A DNA stretch of 64,000 nucleotides from Antechinus flavipes. Taxonomy: Eukaryota. Both the position numbers and the translations under genes were made by a program. Shown here one piece after another: positions 4,610-51,550 of the stretch (within the stretch, counting starts at the first letter, position 1; every line of letters begins with the position of its first letter). The notes beneath the pieces are model-generated. The model ran no database searches. It saw nothing but the letters and a program-made list of their open reading frames with translations, and was not told the origin of the DNA. The stretch is from contig NC_067402.1 in the NCBI RefSeq assembly GCF_016432865.1, positions 63,674,001 to 63,738,000 on the forward strand, in the 5' to 3' direction.

Positions 4610-5015
4610 TTCAAGGCTCAAGTGTTATGTAATCTCTTATGGGAAGTGTTCTTGAGCCTCTTGGTTACTAGTGTTCTTGCCTCGGAGAATTACCTTTTTT
4701 TTCCCCTGAGGCAATTGGAGTTAAATGACTTGCCCAGGGTCATACAGCTAAGAAGTGTTAAATCTCTGAGATCAAATTTGAACTCAGGTCCTCCTGACTT
4801 CAGGGCTGATGCTCTATCCACTGCACCAACTAGCTGCCTCTCCTAGAATTATCTTGCATTTACTCATCTATTCACATGAGCCATTCTCCCAGGAGAGAGT
4901 AAATTCAATGAGGTTCTAGGGATATTTTCATTCTTGTCTTTGTAGTCTAAGAGCAAAGCCTAGCACAGTGCCTTACATATAGTAACCTTTTATAAATGCT
5001 TGTTGGATTTGATTG
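4610..5015 (+). mobile_element. L2 3' end interrupted by a WSINE1
   Basis: L2 terminus CCTAGCACAGTGCCTTACATATAG...ATAAATGCTTGTTGGAT. Confidence 0.65.
4695..4840 (-). mobile_element. WSINE1 (marsupial short CORE-SINE)
   Basis: Reverse complement of the head GAGGCAGCTAGTTGGTGCAGTGGATAGAGC, box B GAGTTCAAAT, CORE and A tail; imperfect flanking repeat AGAATTA. Confidence 0.9.
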
Positions 5016-6450: not shown

Positions 6451-9379
6451 TATCACAGAAGGGCTTTGTAGGCATCACATAAGATCATACATATAAAGTA
6501 CTTTGTAAACCTTAAAACTTGTTGGAAGTAGAGTGTCTAATGCAATGTAGCCCTTTCCTGTTCAAAAGCCTCTCCTGTAAAAATTGTTAATATCTCTTTG
6601 GCAAAGTATCTAGGAATTTTACTTGTAAATGTCACTCTATATGATACTTCTCTCTGTAGAATTAGAGAATATGAGCTTGAATTTGATCTGTGAAAAGAAA
6701 AGAAAGATGAAGAGAAGTTTCTTTCATATTGGAACTCAACTTTTATTTATGAAGAAATATTGTTTTATGAGGAGTGAACGTAGAGAGGCACTGTTTTTTT
6801 AGGAGTGAGAATTTGAGAGAAGCTGAAAACAAAATTTTCATGCAAGGATTGAAGAAAAATAGAGAGAACAGAGACAAAGAAGATGGGAAAGTTTTCTTTC
6901 TTTAAACTTTTGCTAACAAAAAAAAAAAAAAAGAAAATCCTTGTGAAGAGACCATATTTGTTTTCCTGAATGAACTTAATGGTATGAGAATGTGTTCTCA
7001 GAAGTAAAGAGAAACCATCTATAGTTACAGAACGAATTTGAATTGTCTGTGCTAACTCTTAAAATTAAAATATAGGAAAGAATTACTTGTTTTATTATTT
7101 ATTTCACTGATAACAAATTATATATTCAACAACTTTAGTGTTTATTTAATCCTAAAAGATTAAGGGATTTAATGATATATAATAACTACTACTGGAGAAA
7201 AAGATTTCTCTAGTTTGTTAAGTAAAGACTAGTTGATAAACTGGGGTGGGGATACTGAACTTCATTGATTTATTTAGATATATGTTGAAATTTTAGTAAT
7301 TGATATCCAAATATACTCCTGGATTATGCTAGTATGATGAGATTAAGCATGAGAATGATTAGAGGAGCACATGGGGGGTTGAGGGGAATGACCAATCAAT
7401 GAGATTGATTGACCCTTTGTAATCTTGCCATACATGATTATATATGGTGGTGATACTGGGAGTTGGGTGTCCTTTAACCTGCTAAAATTGTAAGAACTAG
7501 ATATTAAGTGCTCACCCTAGAAATCACTTTGGAGTCTCAGTTCAGCTTTTTGTGACTCCTTTCTCTATAAATCTAAAGGGAGATACATTGCAAATTTTAT
7601 CAGTAAAAGGCAGGTTCTCCACAAGTCCCAAGGTCATTGCAAAACCCTGGAGGGATCAAGGACAGTAGCCCTGGGGAATTTCTGCCTGAAACCAGCACAA
7701 CATCCATCCCCAGAATCCTATTCTCTTTAGAGATATTTGAAGGACACATGGCCAAAACAGGAATATATTTTAAAAAGAGGCTTTCCCATTTTGGATTCCA
7801 AGATTTAAAAAAAAAAAAGACTTGAAAAATGACCGAGGCATTCAGTGAAACTGGAAGGAATCCTGCAAATCCATCAGAGGCCTTGACATTTTCGAATCAG
7901 GGAGCTCACTATTTGCAGTTTGGAACTTTTTCAGATAGTTCCTGTGAGAGGGCACAACCCTCACTGATGACCTTGCAGGTGTAGATAGCAGTTGCTTCAA
8001 CAAGGGCAAGAGAGTTTGTTGTGTAACAAAGGATGTGAAGAAGTGGGGGAGGAGTGGAGAGAGAAGATCCAATTTTATATGTGCCATAACAGCCTTGATA
8101 AAATCATGGGCTTTTTCATTTAAATTTGTGACAGGATCACAATATTTTTGAATATTCATCTAGACAAAATAAATGGGTTTCCCTTTTTCCCTTTTACAAA
8201 GACAAAGAAAAGAGGTACCATTTCTTTCTCCTTTCCTGGAATGCTGATATGATGCTCAAAGGAGTGTTTACTTTCTGCATAAACTGACCAAAGTAAACCG
8301 CCTATGATTTGTAAGGGGGAAAGGAATCAAAATCAGGGATTGCTGTATTCTACATATGTAGGTCAAATAAATCCACTTGCAGCCCAACAGTATCATCTTA
8401 CTTTCTGGGGTTTTTTTTTATGACCTAGTTTCTTTAAAATCAATTCAAGCATTCAAGATGTTTATAGCAACCTGGTGTGAAGACAGTGGCTGAGATAAAT
8501 ACTAGCCTTGCTACTTTTGTGAAATACTTTAATTTGTTATGCAACATCAAAAAACTCTCCCAAGAATTAAGTGATTTGATTAAGGTGCTTCCAAAGTTAT
8601 ATATGGTTGAACATTTTGCAATCATTCAAAAACAATTACAGGATCAACATATAATTCATTTAAAGAGATAAGTGTGGTAAAGTGGGATGAATCAGTTGTT
8701 TATATAATCTCAAAATAGGAGTAGGAACAGACCTTTTGGTTTCATTTGGATATGCTCTTGATGAATGCAGATACAACCTTGTTACACTTTTAGTCTTAGA
8801 GAATTGACTAGTCTTTGGAGATGAGGTGATTTGCTTGCTAGGTAATTCGACAACTATGTCAAAAGCAGTTCTTGAACCCAGGTCTTCTCTCTTAGAATAA
8901 TTACTAGCCTTTTGATATCATTGATAGGAATATTATAATTGTCCTCACAATATAGATCGGAATGAGAATGTGCTATTGTTGGCAGAAAATTTATATTTAA
9001 ATTTTTATTGTTCTGTTAATGTTTTATGGGGATAGAGACTAGACCTATAATTTTGTTAGTATAGGCAACTATAATAGAGGGAGAAAATTCTCTGCATTAT
9101 TTCAGGTCAACTTGCTGTCCAAGGAATAAGATTCTAGACTTAACTTTTTATCTCAGTTGCTGTGTGACTGGGGACAATGATGGAGTTGATGGAGATGATA
9201 TCTAAGGTTACTTCCAGATATAAAAGAGCTAAGCAGGGATATTGAAACTGAGCCTTTCCAATTATGAAAGAGAATAATTTGCCTTCTGGGTAAAAAAAAA
9301 AAACGAGAAACATTTTTTTTAAAAATATAATTCATAGCTTATAATTATTATTTTATCTTGGCATATTAAAATTTTAGAG

Positions 9380-9660: not shown

Positions 9661-9679
9661 CATACAAAACAAATTTGTG

Positions 9680-9905
9680 GTGTGGTGAAGAAAGTGCTAG
9701 ACCTGAGCCTGTAAAACTTGATTTCAAATCCTGCTTCACTCCCTTGATAACTCTGTGAATCTAGGCAAGTTGCTTATTCTCTGTTTGCCTCACTTTGCTC
9801 ATCTGTAAGATGGTGAAAATAATAGCACCTACCTCTCAGGGTTTTTGTTGAGGATCAAATGAGATAATGTTTGTGAACCTTCCAAACTATGTATTAACCA
9901 TCATT
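9680..9905 (+). mobile_element. MIR SINE, near full length
   Basis: tRNA-like head, CORE CCTCACTTTGCTCATCTGTAAGATGG, tail GAGGATCAAATGAGATAATG. Confidence 0.9.
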
Positions 9906-16191: not shown

Positions 16192-16632
16192 AAAGTTGGC
16201 CATTACAATTGCACAGAATTTCATTTGCATTATTTTGTTGTTGTCATTCTTTAATTTATATTTTGGCAAAGAAAAGATATAATATTTATTATCTTCAAAT
16301 ATGTGAAAGGCTGTCTTTCCCTGTCTCATATGACTTTTTTAGGACCAAAGTTGACTATTACAATTGCGTGAAATTTCATTTGTGTTGTTTTGTTGTTGCC
16401 GTTCTTTCATTTACATAGTGGCAAAGAAAAAACATAAATATTATATTCAGGGGCAGCTAGGTGGTGCAGTGGATAGAGTACCAGCCCTGAAGTCAAGAGG
16501 ACCTGAGTTAAAATCTGACCTCAGACACTTAACACTTCCTAGTTGTGTGACCCTGGGCAAATCACTTAACCCCAATTGCTTCAGCAAAAACAAACAAACA
16601 AAAAGTTATATTCAAATATGTGAAAGGTTGTC
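16192..16632 (+). repeat. Diverged direct (tandem) duplication of about 125 bp; second copy split by WSINE1
   Basis: AAAGTTGGCCATTACAATTGC...TTCAAATATGTGAAAGGCTGTC (16192-16315) versus AAAGTTGACTATTACAATTGC...[SINE]...TTCAAATATGTGAAAGGTTGTC (16348-16632). Confidence 0.9.
16450..16605 (+). mobile_element. Full-length WSINE1 with 9-bp TSD
   Basis: GGGGCAGCTAGGTGGTGCAGTGGATAGAG head, A-rich tail, TSD TTATATTCA at 16441-16449 and 16606-16614. Confidence 0.95.
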
Positions 16633-21140: not shown

Positions 21141-21246
21141 AGCACCATACCTGAAGTCAGGAGGACCTGAGTTCAAATCTGGATTCAGACACTTAACATG
21201 CCTTAGCTGTGTGACCCTGGGCAATCATTTAACCCCAAGTGCCTCA

Positions 21247-24575: not shown

Positions 24576-24726
24576 TTTTTTTTTTTTTTTTTGCTGAGGC
24601 AATTGGTGTTGTGACTTGCTCAGGGTCACACGGCTAGGAAGTGTTAAGTGTTTGAGACTAGATTTGAACTCAGGTCCTCCTGACTTCAGGGTTAGTGCTC
24701 TATCCACTGTGCCATCTAATTGCCCC
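24576..24726 (-). mobile_element. Full-length WSINE1
   Basis: T-tract, antisense CORE, head end CCACTGTGCCATCTAATTGCCCC; flanking repeat CCTTCCA. Confidence 0.93.
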
Positions 24727-26329
24727 CCTTCCATGAATTCTTAAAATTAAAAAAAAAATGCTTCAATGGCCACTTTTTCTTATTTTTCTTTAAAATTTTT
24801 TTTCTTCATCACATTTTCACCTTTCTCCCTTTAAAAAAAAGTCCTTGAAGCAACTATGTATAGACCAGCAAAAAAAAAAATTCTATCATTAACTGTGATT
24901 ATCACTTTTTAGTCTTTATATTCCCTACCCAGCCACCCAGGAACTCAGCAAAGTTTTTGACCTGCATAGTAGGTGCTTAATTAGTATTTGTTGAAGTTTT
25001 CTTTCAACTTCACAGGCTTCAGACACCATTCCATTGTTACCTCTCCACCATTTTACCACCAATATCTTCCCCTCCACTTCCCCCCAAACTTATATGGCAG
25101 AGGAGAGAAGCAGACACCTTCTTCTCTATTTTTCCCTCAAAAAATGATTGGAGATCCTTGAGTTTCTGGGATAAATTTAGGCAGAAATGGAACTCTTCAT
25201 TATCTAGCCACAAAAGGTCCTTCGTTTGACACACAAATTTGACACAGATTCTCTTTCAACATTGGTCTCTGAAAAGTAATTTTTCAGGTTTTCAGAATTG
25301 GGCTTTGCTCCTCCTTACTTCGTGATCCCTCAGGTCACCATCTCAGTTATTAGAAGTCTTGAAAAGCCTGGGTGGCATTTTCCTGAGAACCTGGGATGCT
25401 GGATAAAAGCTTCAGGGGTGAAGCTTTTTCCATCGCTGCCAGGGCCCCCTACAATCCCTTTTATTCTCCCAAAACCCAGATGTGTAGGAACTCTAACCAG
25501 CTCTCATTCCCACAGGCTTGGTCAAATAGCAGAAGACTCATTCTTCTTGTTGCAATGATTTCTTCATAAAGATCAAGAAAATAAGAAAAAAAATCCAATA
25601 ATTGGGTGAGAATTGACTACCACCAGCAAGAGCTACAGAGATACAAGTATGTTGTATGGCTCTGGGGACTCTCTCTGGCAAGTCTCTCCGGGTGAGCCAG
25701 ATGCTCTCCACTTCCCCAAAACTCACAAAGAAGAAGAAGAACCTTTCCTTTCCTCCTTTTAACCCTACAATTTGTTATTTTAAGCTATAATCTCTACAGT
25801 TAAGGGAATATTCCAAACAAAATGGGCCTCAGCGATTGAAATGTGTTAGCTTGCCTTCTGTTTTAAATCCTTGTCGGCAGCTGTTTATTGCTTTAAGTAA
25901 CACAAAGCAATTGCAAAGATCCCTTAATTATTTACACCTGGCAACTTAGGCTTATAAAATATCATCAAGACTAAAAAAAAAAAAAAGAAAAAAGAAAAAA
26001 GAAAAAAGAAAGAAAGCACCAATAATTCATTTGGAGGAAACTCCCAGAGTTAATCTCGGGGTCCTCCCTTTGTATCCCCATTCAAGTTACAGCAAGAAAA
26101 AGGTGTGTCTAAGACCAGGATTTCTTTGTAGATGCAAGAGAATAAACTGAAAATAGAAGCTTTTCCAGAGGCAATGGAAAGCACAGTGCTAACCACAGGA
26201 CTTAATTTCTAGACTAAAGAGTTTGATTATACTGGAATCTATGTTTCTCCTTGGATATAGGGCTGGATTGCTTCAGTCATGTGAATTGGTCTGGTTTTCA
26301 TGTCTGTAGAGAATTGAGCTGAATAGTCA

Positions 26330-26860
26330 GAAGTTGGAGGAGAGGAAGGACAAGAGAAAGAAAGGAGGGTAGAGAAAGGAAAATGAAGAAAAAGAGAAGA
26401 AGAAAAAGGAAAAAGAAGGGTTAAGAAAAGGAACAGGAGGAGGAAGAGGAAAGGATGAAAAGAAGGAAAAAAGCAGGAGGAGGAAGAAGTAAAGGAAAAG
26501 AAGGGAGAGAATGAAAAAGAGGTTGAGCATCAGGAAGAAGAGAGGAACAACAAGATGAAGTGAGGAGGAAAGGGGAAAGAGAAAGAAGAAGAGATGAAGG
26601 AAAAGGAAGAGGAGAGAAGAGCTGAAGAAAGAGGAAAGGGAGGAGGAGATAAAGAAGAAGGGGGAAGAGAAAAAGAGATGGTGGAAATAGAAGAAAAGAT
26701 CTGGAGGAAGAAGAAGAGGAAAAGATGAAGAAGATAGGAAAAAAAAGTAAGAAAAGATGGAATAAGAGGAGGAGGAAAGCAGAAATAGGAAGGAATGGAG
26801 GAACAGGTAGGGGAGAAGAGAAGACCTGAAAAAAGAAGAGGAGCAGGAAGAAGTTCAGGA
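26330..26860. repeat. Polypurine (GA-rich) tract, about 530 bp
   Basis: Overwhelmingly A/G on the + strand; source of the F/L/S/P-rich minus ORFs at 26327-26925. Confidence 0.95.
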
Positions 26861-27464
26861 AGCCCATCATGGTATAATGACTTAGTGGATAGAGAACTGG
26901 CCTTAGAGTAAATCCCAGGGTTCAAATTCTGTCTGCCACATGTGAACTAGTAGATATGGGGACCCTGGATACATAGCAACCCCTCAGGCTTCCAGGTAGC
27001 TCTGCAGTAGTTGCAGAGCAGTTGCTGATCTGAATTGGTAGAACTAGGAGTGCCATATACCAATGAAATCACAGGTTCTGTTTTAAAAACAGCAGCAACA
27101 TAGTTCTCATTTCTATCACACATTAAGCTTTCTTACATCGTCATTTGATTCTCCAAATAGCCCCACGAAGAAGATGCTATTATTATCCACATCTTATAGA
27201 TGAGGAACCAGGGTGAGAGAGTCTAAGTGATTAGCCCAGAGCATCAGGGATTCCTGGGCCACAGCTAATAAGTTCTGCAACTACTGCAGAGCTACCTGGA
27301 AGCCTGAGGGGTTGCTATGTATCCAGGGTCCCCATATCTACTAGTTCACATGTGGCAGACAGAATTTGAACCCTGGAATTTACTCTAAGGTCAGTTCTCT
27401 ATCCACTAATTCATTATACCATGATGTGCTTCCTGAACCTCTTCCTGCTCCTCTTCTTCTTTCA
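26827..27464. repeat. Long inverted repeat: 191-bp arms (26827-27017, 27274-27464), 256-bp spacer
   Basis: Manual base-by-base alignment of the arms: 6 mismatches, no indels; inner 103 bp identical. Confidence 0.97.
26865..27080 (+). mobile_element. Marsupial CORE-SINE with ...ATACCAATGAAATCACAGG-type tail
   Basis: tRNA-like head GTGGATAGAGAACTGGCC...GGGTTCAAAT and tail TTGCAGAGCAGTTGCTGATCTGAATTGGTAG...CAATGAAATCACAGG; exact family uncertain. Confidence 0.6.
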
Positions 27465-27515
27465 ATATTTGAACCCAGGTTTGTTTCTGGGTCTGGCACT
27501 TTATCCACTTACTAC
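27125..27515 (-). mobile_element. MIR split in two by the right arm of the inverted duplication
   Basis: Antisense MIR ...GATGAGGAACC...CACAGCTAATAAGT stops at 27273 and resumes ATTTGAACCCAGGT...CACTTTATCCACT after 27464. Confidence 0.75.
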
Positions 27516-27646
27516 AGAGTGAAGAGTTGAAAGACCCTCCTGTCCCTAAAGTATGAGATGTATCTTTTGGAATGTCCAACTTAGACCCAAGAGAGTCATT
27601 TATAAATAGAAGGAATGTGTCTCACCTGGTTTTAAAATAAATGACT

Positions 27647-27679
<33 letters not shown>

Positions 27680-28129
27680 CAAACCAAAACCAATGATGAG
27701 GCTATTGTCTGTGATTGTGAAATTGCTGTGATACTCCAAAGCCAGACCTCCCTGGTAGAGAGATTCTTGTGAGTGTATCTAAGGCTCTAATGCCTGTTGG
27801 GTAGAATTTCCCAGACTTCCCCTCTTTGGCCCCGGAATTGAAGAGTCAGATTAAAAAACAGGCAATCTGCACCCAAAAACACAATTCAATACAGTCTTTG
27901 TAGGATGAGATCAAACAGATGAATCACACTGGAGCCCATGTAAATTTGGATACAACATACACCTTGCCAATGGAAACTGCAGGAATCTGAGATATCTGGC
28001 CAGAAGAAAAAAATCTCTAGGGCAAAATGGCTGCTTACTTGGCACTGCTCAGAGAAAGAGAGGAGGAAATTCCCTTGACTGGGTCCAGAAATCTGTCAGC
28101 CAAAATGCAGAACAGAAAGAGTTAGCCAA

Positions 28130-28290
28130 AGTTCTGGGTTCAAGCCCCAGCTTTCCCACACTAGAAAATCATTTTGCTGTTCTAAAGTCTCATTTTCTTC
28201 ATATGTAAAATGCATACATGATTATCATTATTACTGAGTTGTCATGAAGACTAAATAGTATACTATGAAATAGATTTGTCACTGCAAATT
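28130..28290 (+). mobile_element. MIR fragment
   Basis: GGGTTCAAGCCCCAGC, CTCATTTTCTTCATATGTAAAATG. Confidence 0.65.
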
Positions 28291-28404
28291 GTAACCTAAA
28301 AGCGAATTATGTTAGTCCTATTCATGGAGATCTGTGATCCAGCCTTATCTGCTCTTTTCTATTCTGTAGTCCATCTGCGGAGACTGAATGACCAGTGTGT
28401 ATTT

Positions 28405-28765
28405 ATATGTAATATATATGTGGTTGTGTATTTTATATATATGTAGATGTGTGTGTATATATAGAGAAAGAGAGAAAGAGAGAGAAAAAGAAAGAAAGAG
28501 AGAAAGAAAGAGAAAGAGAGAGAGAGACTAATTTAAGATGAGTGGGTGTTTCAATACTCTACACATGTATATGACAGCTAATTTAAACTGATTTAGACTA
28601 TTTCATATACCTTCATATATATGTACATACACACATACATATAGATATATAACTTTCATGTGTATCAGTTGGGAACTTTGGGAGGTCCATTTCCTACTTT
28701 GGAAGGGCATTAATAAGGAATTTCAACTGCACAGAATGGTATAGTAGAAAATATGTAAAATATTG

Positions 28766-28819
<54 letters not shown>

Positions 28820-28870
28820 TATTACATTTACTGTTATTACTGCTACTATCACCACCACCACTACTACTGG
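28405..28870. repeat. Cluster of (TA)/(TG)/(GAAA)/(TA)n/(CAC-TAC) simple repeats
   Basis: Direct inspection; long (TA)n at about 28768-28822. Confidence 0.85.
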
Positions 28871-28874
28871 CTAG

Positions 28875-29110
28875 CTAGAATTTTCATAGTGTTCACTATG
28901 TGCCTTTACAAATATTATCTCATTTGATCCTCACAACAACTCTGAGAAGTAGATGCTGTTATAATCACCATTTTACAGTTGAGGAAATTGAGACAAATAG
29001 CGATTAAATGACTTATTCAGAGTCACATATAGTAATTTTCTGAGGCCATTTTTGAACTCAGATCTTCCTGACTCTAGTCTCAGTGCTGTAACCACTATAC
29101 CACTTGGATG
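28875..29110 (-). mobile_element. MIR-family SINE
   Basis: TATCTCATTTGATCCTCACAACAAC, TTTTACAGTTGAGGAAATTGAG, TTTGAACTCAGATCTTCCTGACTC. Confidence 0.9.
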
Positions 29111-29859: not shown

Positions 29860-30830
29860 GTAAGTTCAAGTTTCTTTGATCAAGCATATATCTTCAGGCA
29901 TTGAAAGAACTAGCAAATGTTCTAGTAGATGAAGTAAGTCAATGATCTCTGAAATATTGTAAAGTACTGATTGTTACAATTTTTCTTTGCTCATACAGCA
30001 CAGTGTCTTATTTGGTGTGAGTATGCTATGCTCACTTTGCCAGTGTTTTTCCATGTCTTATAATTGATTCCTAACTGAAACTGAGGAATTAAGAGGCATA
30101 AAGAAGGGCAAATATCCCAATTTTCAAAAATTAAAGAGAATGGAGTAAACAAACTACTTCACTTTGAATTTGAAAAACATTTTGGAGTCAGAATATGTGG
30201 GTTCCACCTATGACTCTAATACTGGCTGCATGACCACAGGCAAGAAAATGTTTTACTGTCTCAGCAACTCTCTAAGACTTATAAATTACTACGGATTTGA
30301 ATCAAGAAAAGGCTTTTCCATACCAGGAGCTCCATATGTTAATGAAATCATTGGAACATGTCATTATCCTTTAAAACAAACAAATAAAATCCAAGATGGC
30401 TAAGTACAGTATATTATACTTGGGTTGCAAGTATGAATTGCACAAGTATAGGGTGGGCATGAGAGTTATCTAGAAGAAAACTTGTAATCTATTGTGAATT
30501 TAATAAAAGTAAACAGATCGATGTGAGAGCCGGGGATTGTGATTGATATATGATTGATCTCAGAATGTGCTGGAGAAATAGACTATCCAGATTGATAATC
30601 TCATTTTTCTCTGCACTAAGCAAAAACTATCCAAAGTACTGTATATAGTTAAGGGTACCACATTTTAGGGAGGACATTGATGTGTTCATAGAAGGATAAT
30701 TAGACTAATAATAGGACTTGGATTTTAATCTAAGGAAGAAAGAATATAGAGAGCATATGAATACCATCTTGAAGTACTTAATGGGCCATTATGTAGACGA
30801 ACAAGTAGTTTTATGTAGCTTAAGAAGCAA
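29860..30830 (+). mobile_element. Fragmented L3/CR1 ORF2 (with a MIR piece at about 30170-30300)
   Basis: CR1 motifs TTGAAAGAACTAGCAAATG, AAGGGCAAATATCCCAATTTTCAAAAA, CCACATTTTAGGGAGGACATTGA. Confidence 0.65.
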
Positions 30831-47319: not shown

Positions 47320-48520
47320 GAAAAATGGATAATTTTTATTATATTAAATTAAAAAGCTTTTGAATGAAAAACCCAAAATTAGAAGGGAAGCAGAAAACGG
47401 GGGGAAATTTTTATATTCAAGGGTTCTGATAACAGCCTCATTTCTAAAACATATAGAGAATTGACTCAAATTTATAAGTACACAAGCCATTCTCCAAGTG
47501 ATAAATGGTCAAAGGATACAAATAATTTTCATATGAAGAAATTAAAACCATCTTTAGTCATATGAAAAAATGTTTTAAATTACCATTGATTAGAGAAATG
47601 CAAATTAAGACAACTCTGAGGTAGCACTACACATCTCTCAGATGGGCTAACATGACAGGAAAAGATAATAAAGAATGTTGGAGGGAATGTGGGAAAACTG
47701 GGACACTGATACATTGTTGATGGAATTGTGAATTGATCTAACCATTCTGGAAAGGAATTTGGAACTATGCCCAAAGGGTTCTCAAACTCTCCATACCCTT
47801 TGATCCAACAGTGTCTCTACTGGGTTTGTATTCCAAAGAGATCATAAAAAAGGAAAAGGACATGTATAAAAATGTAGCAGTCTTTTTTGTAGTGACAAGG
47901 AATTGAAAACTGAATGGATGCCCATCAATTGGAGAATGGCTGAATAAATTATGATATGTGAATGTTATGGAATATTATTGTTCTATAAAAACAATATCTA
48001 TAAAAGCAAAAAAAGATCAGCAGAGTGATTTCAGAAAGGCCTGAAGATACTTACATGAACTAATACTGAGTGAAATGAGTAGAACCAAGAGAACATTGTA
48101 TACAACAATAAGATTAAGTACTGATCAACCGTGATGGATGTGACTTTTCAACAGTGAGGTGATTCAGTCCAATTCCAATATACTTTTGATGGAGAGAGCC
48201 ATCTGAACCCACAGAAAAGACTGTGAAGACTGAATGTGAATCACAACATAGTATTTTCACCTTTTTTGTTGTTGTTTGCTTGATTTTTTTTCTTTCTTAT
48301 TTGTTCTTTTTTATTTGTTTTTTCTTGTGCAGCATGATAAATGTGGAAATATGTATAGAAGAATTGTACATGTTTAATATAAATTTGATTACTTGCTCTC
48401 TAGGGGAGAAGGTGAAGGGAAAGGAGGGAGGAAAATTTGGAAAACAAGGTTTTGCAGGGGTGAATATTGAAAACTATCTTTGCATATATTTTAAAAATAA
48501 AAACCTATTATTAAAAATTA
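47320..48520 (+). mobile_element. L1 3' fragment (ORF2 C-terminus plus 3'UTR, about 1.2 kb)
   Basis: GAGAAATGCAAATTAAGACAACTCTGAGG, TTGGAACTATGCCCAAAGG, GAATGGCTGAATAAATTATG; ends at AAAAATAAAAACCTATTATTAAAAATT. Confidence 0.93.
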
Positions 48521-48800: not shown

Positions 48801-48896
48801 TGATGGTGCCACTTTACAGATGAAGAAATTAAGAATAAAAATTCACTGCTCTTGTCACTATACCTAGCTGCCTTAAATAACTTTGCAAAATATTTT

Positions 48897-49199
48897 TAAT
48901 AGTACCTTTTCATTTTTGAAATACATGCAAAGATAGTTTTCAACATTCACCCTTGCAAAACCTTGCATTCCAATTTTTTCACCCTTCTTTTCCTCAACTC
49001 CCTCCCCTAAACAGCAAGGAATCCAATATATGTTAAACATACGCAATTCTCTCTATATATTTCCACATTTATTATGCTATACAAGAAAAATCAAATCAAA
49101 AGGGAAAAACAAATGAGAAAGAAAAAATCAAACAACAACAACAAAAGTTGAAAATACTATGTTGTGATGCACATTCAGTCCCCACAATCCTCTTTCTGG
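48897..49199 (-). mobile_element. 5'-truncated L1 (303 bp) with 17-bp TSD
   Basis: TSD ACTTTGCAAAATATTTT at 48880-48896 and 49200-49216. Confidence 0.95.
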
Positions 49200-51291: not shown

Positions 51292-51550
51292 GATGCTTCT
51301 AGGTGGTGCAGTAGACATGAGTCCAGGCAAGAATCTAAAAGATCTGAATTAAATTCCAGCTTCAGACACTTACTAGCTGTGTGACCCATGGCACTTAACT
51401 TTTGTTTGCCTCAGTTTCCTCATCTGTAAAATGAAGATAATAAAAGCACCCATCTCCCAGAGCTGTTGTGAAGATCAAATGAGATAATAAGTGTGAAGCA
51501 CTTCAGGGTCTGGCACATAAGGCTATGTAATTGTTAGATATTATTGTTAT
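51292..51550 (+). mobile_element. MIR-family SINE, near full length
   Basis: CTAGGTGGTGCAGTAGA head, GCCTCAGTTTCCTCATCTGTAAAATG CORE, GATCAAATGAGATAATA tail. Confidence 0.92.

What the first reader, a model, noticed from the sequence alone, without database searches (positions are those of the whole stretch)
26827..27464. 191-bp templated inverted duplication pasted into a MIR, forming a potential long hairpin/cruciform
27274-27464 is the reverse complement of 26827-27017. The copied block crosses element boundaries (polypurine tract end plus the 5' part of a SINE), so it is not two independent SINE insertions. The right arm interrupts an antisense MIR exactly: CACAGCTAATAAGT | arm | ATTTGAACCCAGG, replacing roughly a dozen MIR bases, with no TSD or poly(A). 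This fits local fold-back template switching or break repair from a template about 260 bp away, possibly seeded by the oppositely oriented SINE homology. It would extrude as a stem of about 190 bp in DNA, or as dsRNA if transcribed.
Basis: partly seen in the sequence, partly recalled or inferred. Interest (0 to 1): 0.72.

Follow-up and report, generated by a model that had tools for sequence, protein, structure and literature searches.

The report
Local inverted copy pasted into MIR
A 191-base stretch of this marsupial genome was copied backwards into an old MIR repeat 256 bases away, which looks like an ordinary scar of DNA copying that switched template and returned, with no sign of a function.

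Summary
Arms 26827-27017 and 27274-27464 are reverse complements: 191 nt, 185 matches, no gaps, 256-nt spacer. This is the only inverted pair in the window above 88% identity.

The left arm is the source. It holds the last 35 nt of a 529-nt purine-rich tract and the first ~150 nt of an RTE-tailed CORE-SINE that continues to ~27082. The right arm sits inside an antisense MIR. Other MIR copies in the window show about 11 (±2) MIR bases missing at that site. There is no target-site duplication, no poly(A) and no SINE 3' tail, so retroposition and a mobile fold-back element are excluded.

The layout is the known "3-2-1-4" template-switch mutation (Löytynoja & Goldman 2017), only longer than usual. 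The six differences are all substitutions (4 transitions, 2 transversions), which argues against an assembly artefact and suggests an age of a few million years.

Not obtained:
- An orthologous empty site.
- Evidence of transcription.

The idea that SINE homology seeded the event is not supported in register. Verdict: real, and a long member of a known mutation class. Interest is low to moderate.

The parts
26333..26861 (+). Imperfect purine-rich (GA) tract, 529 nt, 91% purine on the + strand. Its last 35 nt lie inside the left arm.
   Evidence: purine fraction 0.909
26827..27017 (+). Left arm, the source (template) of the inverted copy. It is continuous with the GA tract on its left and with the rest of the SINE on its right.
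26862..27082 (+). CORE-SINE with a MIR-like head and a LINE (RTE)-type tail, of Mar1 type by the literature description and my recollection. The 5' end is placed to within about 5 nt. The arm ends inside it at 27017.
   Evidence: Alignment to five WSINE1/MIR-like heads and to two same-architecture copies at 30120-30365 and 8715-8960. Family description in PMC3403934.
27018..27273 (.). Spacer of 256 nt: the SINE tail (to ~27082) plus the first part of the antisense MIR (~27090-27273).
27274..27464 (-). Right arm, the inserted reverse-complement copy of 26827-27017. It has 6 substitutions and no indels.
27465..27530 (-). Remainder of the interrupted MIR (head part, antisense on +). About 11 (±2) MIR bases are missing between 27273 and 27465.

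Best explanation
This is a real germ-line structural mutation in a non-coding, repeat-rich stretch of a marsupial (dasyurid-type) genome.

During DNA synthesis, at a replication fork or in break-repair synthesis, a growing strand left its template inside the MIR at 27273. It copied 191 nt from the opposite-sense template 256-446 nt away, running from 27017 back to 26827 and ending 35 nt into the purine-rich tract. It then returned to the MIR about 11 nt downstream of where it left. In the four-point model this is a 3-2-1-4 event (mirror 1-4-3-2), the type that creates a new inverted repeat with a spacer.

Shown: the structure, the direction of copying (left is the source), the loss of MIR bases, and the absence of retroposition hallmarks. 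Inferred: the polymerase switch itself, which strand switched, and that the purine tract ended the excursion.

The product is most likely neutral. It can form a hairpin or cruciform of about 186-188 bp, but nothing indicates that it is used.
For: Structure:
- The inverted repeat has 185/191 matches, no gaps and sharp ends, and is unique in the window at this identity.
- The left arm is continuous with 529 nt of GA tract on one side and with the rest of the SINE on the other, so it is the template.
- The right arm is flanked on both sides by halves of one MIR. Other MIR copies carry 11-14 nt between the two junction motifs.
- There is no TSD, no poly(A) and no SINE 3' tail.

Fit to a known class: the switch-point order 3-2-1-4 is a described class that creates inverted repeats, 31% of high-confidence human-chimp events together with its mirror (PMC5453318).

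The differences between the arms:
- They are 4 transitions and 2 transversions with no indels, as expected of real mutations rather than assembly or long-read error.
- 3.1% divergence at 0.0045 substitutions per site per Myr (PMC3403934) gives about 3.5 Myr.

Other data:
- Short-read contig sets of two samples of organism A hold 0.90-0.92 of the sampled words of 25800-28800. This is compatible with the assembly but is not localised to the arm.
- Other unchecked notes on the same genome describe similar local inverted templated insertions.
Against: - No read-level or orthologue evidence was obtained, so neither the arm's presence in independent data nor the empty ancestral site is shown.
- The present sequence shows no microhomology at either junction. 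A 4-nt (TCTG) match at one junction and a 2-3-nt match at the other are possible only if the lost MIR bases resembled those of other copies.
- 191 nt is longer, and the net gain of about 180 nt larger, than the short-range events for which the four-point model was developed (PMC5453318, works with fragments from 14 bp and short mutation clusters).
- All six mismatches lie in the outer 88 nt (P about 0.02-0.06). A single clean event followed by uniform neutral decay does not predict this.
Confidence: 0.72

Rival explanations
1. End-joining capture of a free DNA fragment. A piece of about 190 nt, displaced or excised from the neighbouring region (for example a flap or Okazaki-sized or nucleosome-sized fragment), was ligated in inverted orientation into a double-strand break in the MIR that had lost about 11 nt.
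For: The junctions are sharp, with no demonstrable microhomology and a small target deletion. The insert is of Okazaki or nucleosome length (191 nt). The source lies only 256 nt away.
Against: The source copy is still intact in place, so the fragment would have to come from a sister chromatid or from extra synthesis. Fragment capture does not predict such a close source as naturally as a local template switch does. The two models give the same product and cannot be separated from sequence alone.
Confidence: 0.12
2. Assembly artefact: a chimeric fold-back read or a mis-join created the second arm.
For: No read evidence could be obtained. The scaffold has a 148-N run 17 kb away. The inner 103 nt of the arms are identical.
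Against: - The arms differ by 6 substitutions and no indels.
- Sequence continues collinearly on both sides as the two halves of one MIR. A fold-back chimera gives a spacerless palindrome that runs on in reverse.
- Two samples of organism A hold 0.90-0.92 of the sampled words of the 3-kb stretch.
Confidence: 0.07
3. RNA-mediated insertion: a second retroposition of the SINE, or reverse transcription of a local read-through transcript into a break.
For: The block contains SINE sequence. Endonuclease-independent LINE-mediated insertions can lack a TSD and delete target bases (general knowledge).
Against: The copy lacks the SINE 3' tail that the RTE machinery recognises. It carries 35 nt of upstream non-SINE flank, has no poly(A) and ends in mid-SINE. 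This is the opposite of the 5'-truncated, 3'-complete copies that retroposition gives.
Confidence: 0.03
4. A mobile fold-back or TIR element of 638 bp with 191-bp terminal inverted repeats.
For: Long terminal inverted arms around a spacer.
Against: No TSD flanks the unit. One half of the split MIR lies inside the unit and the other half outside it, and the left arm is continuous with its flanks. An inserted element cannot give either. There is no other copy in the window.
Confidence: 0.01

Closest known systems
Template-switch mutations, four-point model type 3-2-1-4 / 1-4-3-2 (Löytynoja & Goldman 2017, PMC5453318; Walker et al. 2021, PMC7954356)
   Same: A fragment is replaced by the reverse complement of a nearby fragment in one switch-and-return event. 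This creates a new inverted repeat separated by a spacer, with dissimilar flanks and an indel at the site.
   Different: The copied fragment (191 nt) and the distance (256-446 nt) are much larger than the mutation-cluster-scale events those studies target. The net gain is about 180 nt. The ancestral state is not available here.
Template switching that creates RNA hairpins and de novo miRNA genes (PMC8794818; bioRxiv 10.1101/2023.04.19.537475, listed, abstracts only)
   Same: A single mutational event creates a ready-made perfect stem.
   Different: Those stems are of miRNA or rRNA hairpin size. Here the stem is about 190 bp, there is no Rfam match and no evidence of transcription.
FoSTeS/MMBIR and fold-back inverted duplications; ODIRA (PMC10766183, listed)
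   Same: A switch between leading and lagging templates at a fork produces inverted copies.
   Different: Those act at kilobase to megabase scale, often produce copy-number change of genes, and usually show junction microhomology or pre-existing short inverted repeats at the switch points. Neither is demonstrable here.
Polymerase-theta end joining with snap-back templated insertions (general knowledge; not checked in papers here)
   Same: A small deletion at a break plus an insert templated from nearby sequence, sometimes in inverted orientation.
   Different: To my knowledge such inserts are typically a few to a few tens of nt and are bounded by microhomology. 191 nt would be exceptional.
Inverted SINE pairs (e.g. 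inverted Alu or MIR pairs) as dsRNA / A-to-I editing substrates (general knowledge)
   Same: Two nearby arms in opposite orientation, partly SINE-derived, able to pair if transcribed.
   Different: The arms here arose by one local duplication, not by two retropositions. They are therefore 97% rather than about 70-88% identical.

Membership tests
Template-switch mutation, type 3-2-1-4 (four-point model) | The inserted fragment (2->3) is the reverse complement of a nearby stretch of the same locus | tested here: met
   185/191 matches with no gaps, source 256 nt away
Template-switch mutation, type 3-2-1-4 (four-point model) | The fragment between points 1 and 4 of the original sequence is replaced by the copy | tested here: met
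   Three other MIR copies in the window carry 11-14 nt between the two junction motifs that are missing here. This is an inference from paralogous copies, not from the ancestral allele.
Template-switch mutation, type 3-2-1-4 (four-point model) | Order of switch points along the reference is 3-2-1-4 (or its mirror), giving an inverted repeat with an uninverted spacer | tested here: met
   Points are 3=26827, 2=27017, 1=27273 and 4=about 27285 in ancestral terms. The spacer holds the SINE tail and the MIR in their original continuity (definition).
Template-switch mutation, type 3-2-1-4 (four-point model) | A closely related sequence keeps the unmutated state (this is how such events are called) | not testable with these tools
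Protein-indexed and metagenome look-ups were blank.
SINE retroposition (independent second insertion) | The copy keeps the 3' tail or poly(A), is bounded by a TSD and holds element sequence only | tested here: not met
   The copy lacks the tail (27018-27082) and includes 35 nt of non-SINE flank. There is no TSD and no poly(A).
Fold-back / TIR DNA transposon | A unit bounded by TIRs and a TSD, inserted so that the target flanks it on both sides | tested here: not met
   There is no TSD. One MIR half lies inside the unit. No other copies were found in the window.
Polymerase-theta (TMEJ) templated insertion | Microhomology at the junctions | tested here: inconclusive
   None is visible in the present sequence. 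Up to 4 nt and 2-3 nt are possible if the lost MIR bases resembled other copies.
Polymerase-theta (TMEJ) templated insertion | Short insert (typically tens of nt at most; from general knowledge) | tested here: not met
   The insert is 191 nt.
Fold-back chimeric-read assembly artefact | Identical arms, no spacer, and reversed sequence continuing beyond the joint | tested here: not met
   There are 6 substitutions, a 256-nt spacer and collinear MIR flanks. Read-level confirmation is still missing.
Known structured RNA / miRNA family | Match to an Rfam covariance model at the gathering score | tested here: not met
   No hit on either arm at E<=1. The only matches are sub-threshold hits on simple repeats at 28604-28831. 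Places 27172-27207 were left out.

The most novel reading that the evidence does not exclude
The locus is one instance of a recurrent, size-specific class of about 200-bp local inverted templated insertions in this dasyurid genome. It is 191 bp here; other unchecked notes on the same genome report a 218-bp inverted templated copy and a two-piece inverted insert. Such a class would point to a distinct mechanism, for example mis-incorporation of Okazaki- or nucleosome-length synthesis products near structure-prone purine tracts. It would be a steady source of near-perfect long hairpins that could seed hairpin-RNA, endo-siRNA or A-to-I editing loci.
Probability: 0.08. Interest if true: 0.6.

Novelty: new member of a known kind. 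Interest (0 to 1): 0.25.

Why it matters
In itself it matters little. It is one probably neutral rearrangement in repeat-rich, non-coding DNA. It is a clean and unusually long example of a single event that creates a near-perfect stem of about 190 bp from nothing. The source, target and both junctions are readable, and it lies next to a 529-nt purine-rich tract that may have ended the copying. Two uses follow. Related species at about 1.4-4.5% divergence appear to exist in public data (rough estimate), so the locus could be a dated presence/absence marker. A genome-wide count of such events could show whether template switching reaches well beyond the tens-of-bases range on which current detection methods focus.

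Tried and rejected
There is therefore no read or contig evidence. After it, they were used only in a local ViennaRNA fold.

2. Orthologues through the protein index. An ORF crossing the outer junction found nothing. Two ORFs from the GA tract and left arm are not on record. A 26-mer from the unique right flank has no match in metagenome contigs.

3. In-register gene conversion or quasipalindrome correction between the inverted SINE and MIR. Rejected: the homology (30/44 nt) maps to the middle of the arm, 77-100 nt from either junction, and the copy includes non-SINE flank.

4. Two-ended invasion of the homeologous SINE by both break ends. Rejected on paper: it would place the two halves of the copy in the opposite order to the one observed.

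5. Retroposition and a fold-back transposon. Rejected.

6. Rfam. Nothing on the arms.

7. Coding context. Seven of the longest ORFs in the window have no Pfam family, and no gene was identified. Whether the locus is transcribed is unknown.

8. Mismatch clustering.

Full report
**Observation**

The region was read directly and scanned for repeats. Arms 26827-27017 and 27274-27464 are reverse complements over 191 nt with a 256-nt spacer. An ungapped comparison extended 40 nt beyond each end gives 185/191 matches and no indel. Identity collapses at once outside both ends.

The six differences are at left/right positions:
- 26832/27459 (A/G)
- 26852/27439 (A/G)
- 26864/27427 (C/A)
- 26881/27410 (C/A)
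- 26900/27391 (G/A)
- 26914/27377 (C/T)

That is four transitions and two transversions. A scan of the whole window for inverted repeats lists 47 pairs. This one is the longest and the only one above 88% identity; the rest are the usual pairs of oppositely oriented interspersed repeats at 70-88%.

**What the pieces are**

The window is AT-rich (32-41% GC). Seven of its longest ORFs have no Pfam family, and no gene was recognised. It contains several copies of a short poly(A)-tailed CORE-SINE (16449-16594, 4696-4841, 24611-24726, 21141-21224). These are of the kind described for marsupials (WSINE1 / SINE1_Mdo; PMC3403934). Other unchecked notes on this genome call it an Antechinus.

- **Purine tract.** The left arm begins 35 nt before the end of a 529-nt tract that is 91% purine on the + strand (26333-26861).
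- **Source SINE.** From about 26862 the sequence aligns to the tRNA-like head of the CORE-SINEs. Two other copies of the same long architecture, at 30120-30365 and 8715-8960, share its head, its middle and a LINE-type tail. The element therefore runs to about 27082. It matches the literature description of RTE-tailed Mar1-type SINEs. That name rests on the description and on my recollection, not on a repeat library. The arm ends at 27017, in the middle of this element.
- **Which arm is the source.** The copied block crosses one element boundary and stops inside an element, so it cannot be a second insertion of the SINE. The left copy is continuous with its surroundings on both sides, so it is the source.
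- **The target.** The right arm is flanked by 27208-27273 and 27465-27530. These align as adjacent parts of MIR copies elsewhere in the window (9670-9800, 28975-29090, 51320-51430). Those copies carry 11-14 nt between the two motifs that abut the arm here, so about 11 (±2) MIR bases were lost at the site.
- **Junctions.** A programmatic check finds no direct repeat at the arm's flanks or at the flanks of the whole 638-nt unit, and no A-run.

**Exclusions**

- **Retroposition** gives copies that are complete at the 3' end, truncated at the 5' end, and carry a tail and a TSD. This copy lacks the 3' tail, includes upstream flank and has neither feature.
- **A mobile fold-back element** would split its target into two outside flanks. 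Here one MIR half lies inside the unit.
- **In-register conversion between the inverted SINE and MIR.** The SINE and the MIR are distant relatives in opposite orientation. The MIR stretch just right of the arm matches SINE positions 26884-26927 at 30/44, above all 300 shuffles. That point lies in the middle of the arm, 77-100 nt from either junction, and the copy also includes non-SINE flank. The old homology may have brought the strands together, but it did not set the switch points.
- **Invasion by both break ends** would put the two halves of the copy in the wrong order (my reasoning on paper).
- **An assembly chimera** of the fold-back kind gives a spacerless palindrome that runs on in reverse. 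Here both flanks continue collinearly and the arms differ by substitutions only.

**Mechanism**

The + strand of the right arm is what a polymerase would make by copying the + strand of the left arm from 27017 down to 26827. Projected on the ancestral sequence, the four switch points lie in the order 3 (26827), 2 (27017), 1 (27273), 4 (about 11 nt after point 1).

In the four-point model of Löytynoja & Goldman, type 3-2-1-4 (mirror 1-4-3-2) creates an inverted repeat. It accounts for 31% of high-confidence human-chimp events. The model does not decide between intra-strand (snap-back) and inter-strand switching (PMC5453318).

I therefore read the locus as one switch-and-return event during replication or break-repair synthesis. 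That the excursion ended 35 nt into a long purine tract, a likely obstacle to synthesis, is my inference.

The present junctions show no microhomology. If the lost MIR bases resembled those of the other copies, up to 4 nt (TCTG) at the inner junction and 2-3 nt at the outer one would have been shared. Only an empty-site orthologue can settle this. Blunt capture of a free fragment of about 190 nt at a break gives the same product and remains the main rival.

**Age and the pattern of differences**

Divergence between the arms is 6/191 = 3.1%. With the local marsupial rate of 0.0045 per site per Myr used for WSINE1 (PMC3403934) this is about 3.5 Myr. With a slower generic mammalian rate of about 0.002 (my knowledge) it is about 8 Myr.

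Two details suggest caution:
- All six differences lie in the outer 88 nt (P = 0.02 two-sided; P = 0.06 for an identical run of 103 nt or more).
- At the three SINE-internal differences where the related heads give a polarity (26881, 26900, 26914), the right arm carries the derived base.

Both would fit error-prone copying at the time of the event, or later conversion of the inner half.

**Consequences**

Folded locally, the two arms alone give -227 kcal/mol with DNA parameters and -364 kcal/mol with RNA parameters. The whole 638-nt stretch folds with 186-188 arm-to-arm pairs on either strand. The potential for a long hairpin or cruciform is real. No Rfam family matches either arm.

Whether the locus is transcribed is unknown. 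Three RNA-labelled or possibly-RNA runs of other organisms hold 7-11% of the sampled words of the 3-kb stretch, but I could not locate which part.

**What could not be done**

The look-up of sequencing runs found a useful series. Two samples of organism A hold 0.90-0.92 of the words. Organisms B-D hold 0.57-0.65, E holds 0.42 and F-I about 0.21-0.24. If these shares reflect divergence, they correspond to roughly 1.4%, 1.8%, 2.8% and 4.5%. This is a rough inference, because coverage also matters.

The cap barred a second call beside them.

Attempts to reach orthologous DNA by ORFs across the junction or in the left arm, and by a unique 26-mer in metagenome contigs, were blank.

**Comparison and verdict**

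The closest known kind is the template-switch mutation that creates inverted repeats. It is documented for mutation clusters, for RNA hairpins and de novo miRNAs, and at larger scale as FoSTeS/MMBIR/ODIRA. This locus meets the structural criteria of the 3-2-1-4 type. It differs mainly in scale (191 nt copied, about 180 nt net gain) and in lacking demonstrable microhomology.

Two unchecked notes on the same genome describe similar local inverted templated insertions (218 bp, and a two-piece insert). That is a lead for a genome-wide count, not evidence. I rate the finding as real (about 0.9), explained by a known mutational process (0.72 for the template switch specifically), probably neutral, and of low to moderate interest.

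Noticed in passing
window 48230-48518 and 48892-49180: A second local inverted repeat: two LINE-1-like end segments of about 290 nt at roughly 80% complementarity, facing each other around a 373-nt spacer that holds a MIR-like element. It could be two independent L1 fragments or a much older inverted duplication of the same kind.
   Followed up: partly
window 26333-26861: A 529-nt imperfect purine-rich tract, 91% A+G on the + strand, with loose 6-31-nt periodicities. It may form triplex or H-DNA, and the copied tract ends 35 nt inside it.
   Followed up: partly
window ~27540-27678: An AATAAA signal followed 8 nt later by a pure 29-nt A run (27649-27677). This looks like the 3' end of a poly(A)-type retrocopy just right of the interrupted MIR.
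   Followed up: no
window 16449-16594, 4696-4841, 24611-24726, 21141-21224: Four copies of a short poly(A)-tailed CORE-SINE, 84-86% alike pairwise, WSINE1/SINE1-like. They mark the genome as marsupial.
   Followed up: partly
window 28395-28527 and 28764-28831: Simple TG/TA and AG repeats that give sub-threshold Rfam matches to mir-297 and mir-1277 (32.9 bits or less against gathering scores of 81-90). These are low-complexity hits, not miRNA genes.
   Followed up: no
   Followed up: no
window 25800-28800: Three RNA-labelled or possibly-RNA runs of other organisms (X18-X20) hold 7-11% of the sampled words of this stretch. Which part they hold, and whether it reflects transcription or a shared repeat, could not be determined.
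   Followed up: no
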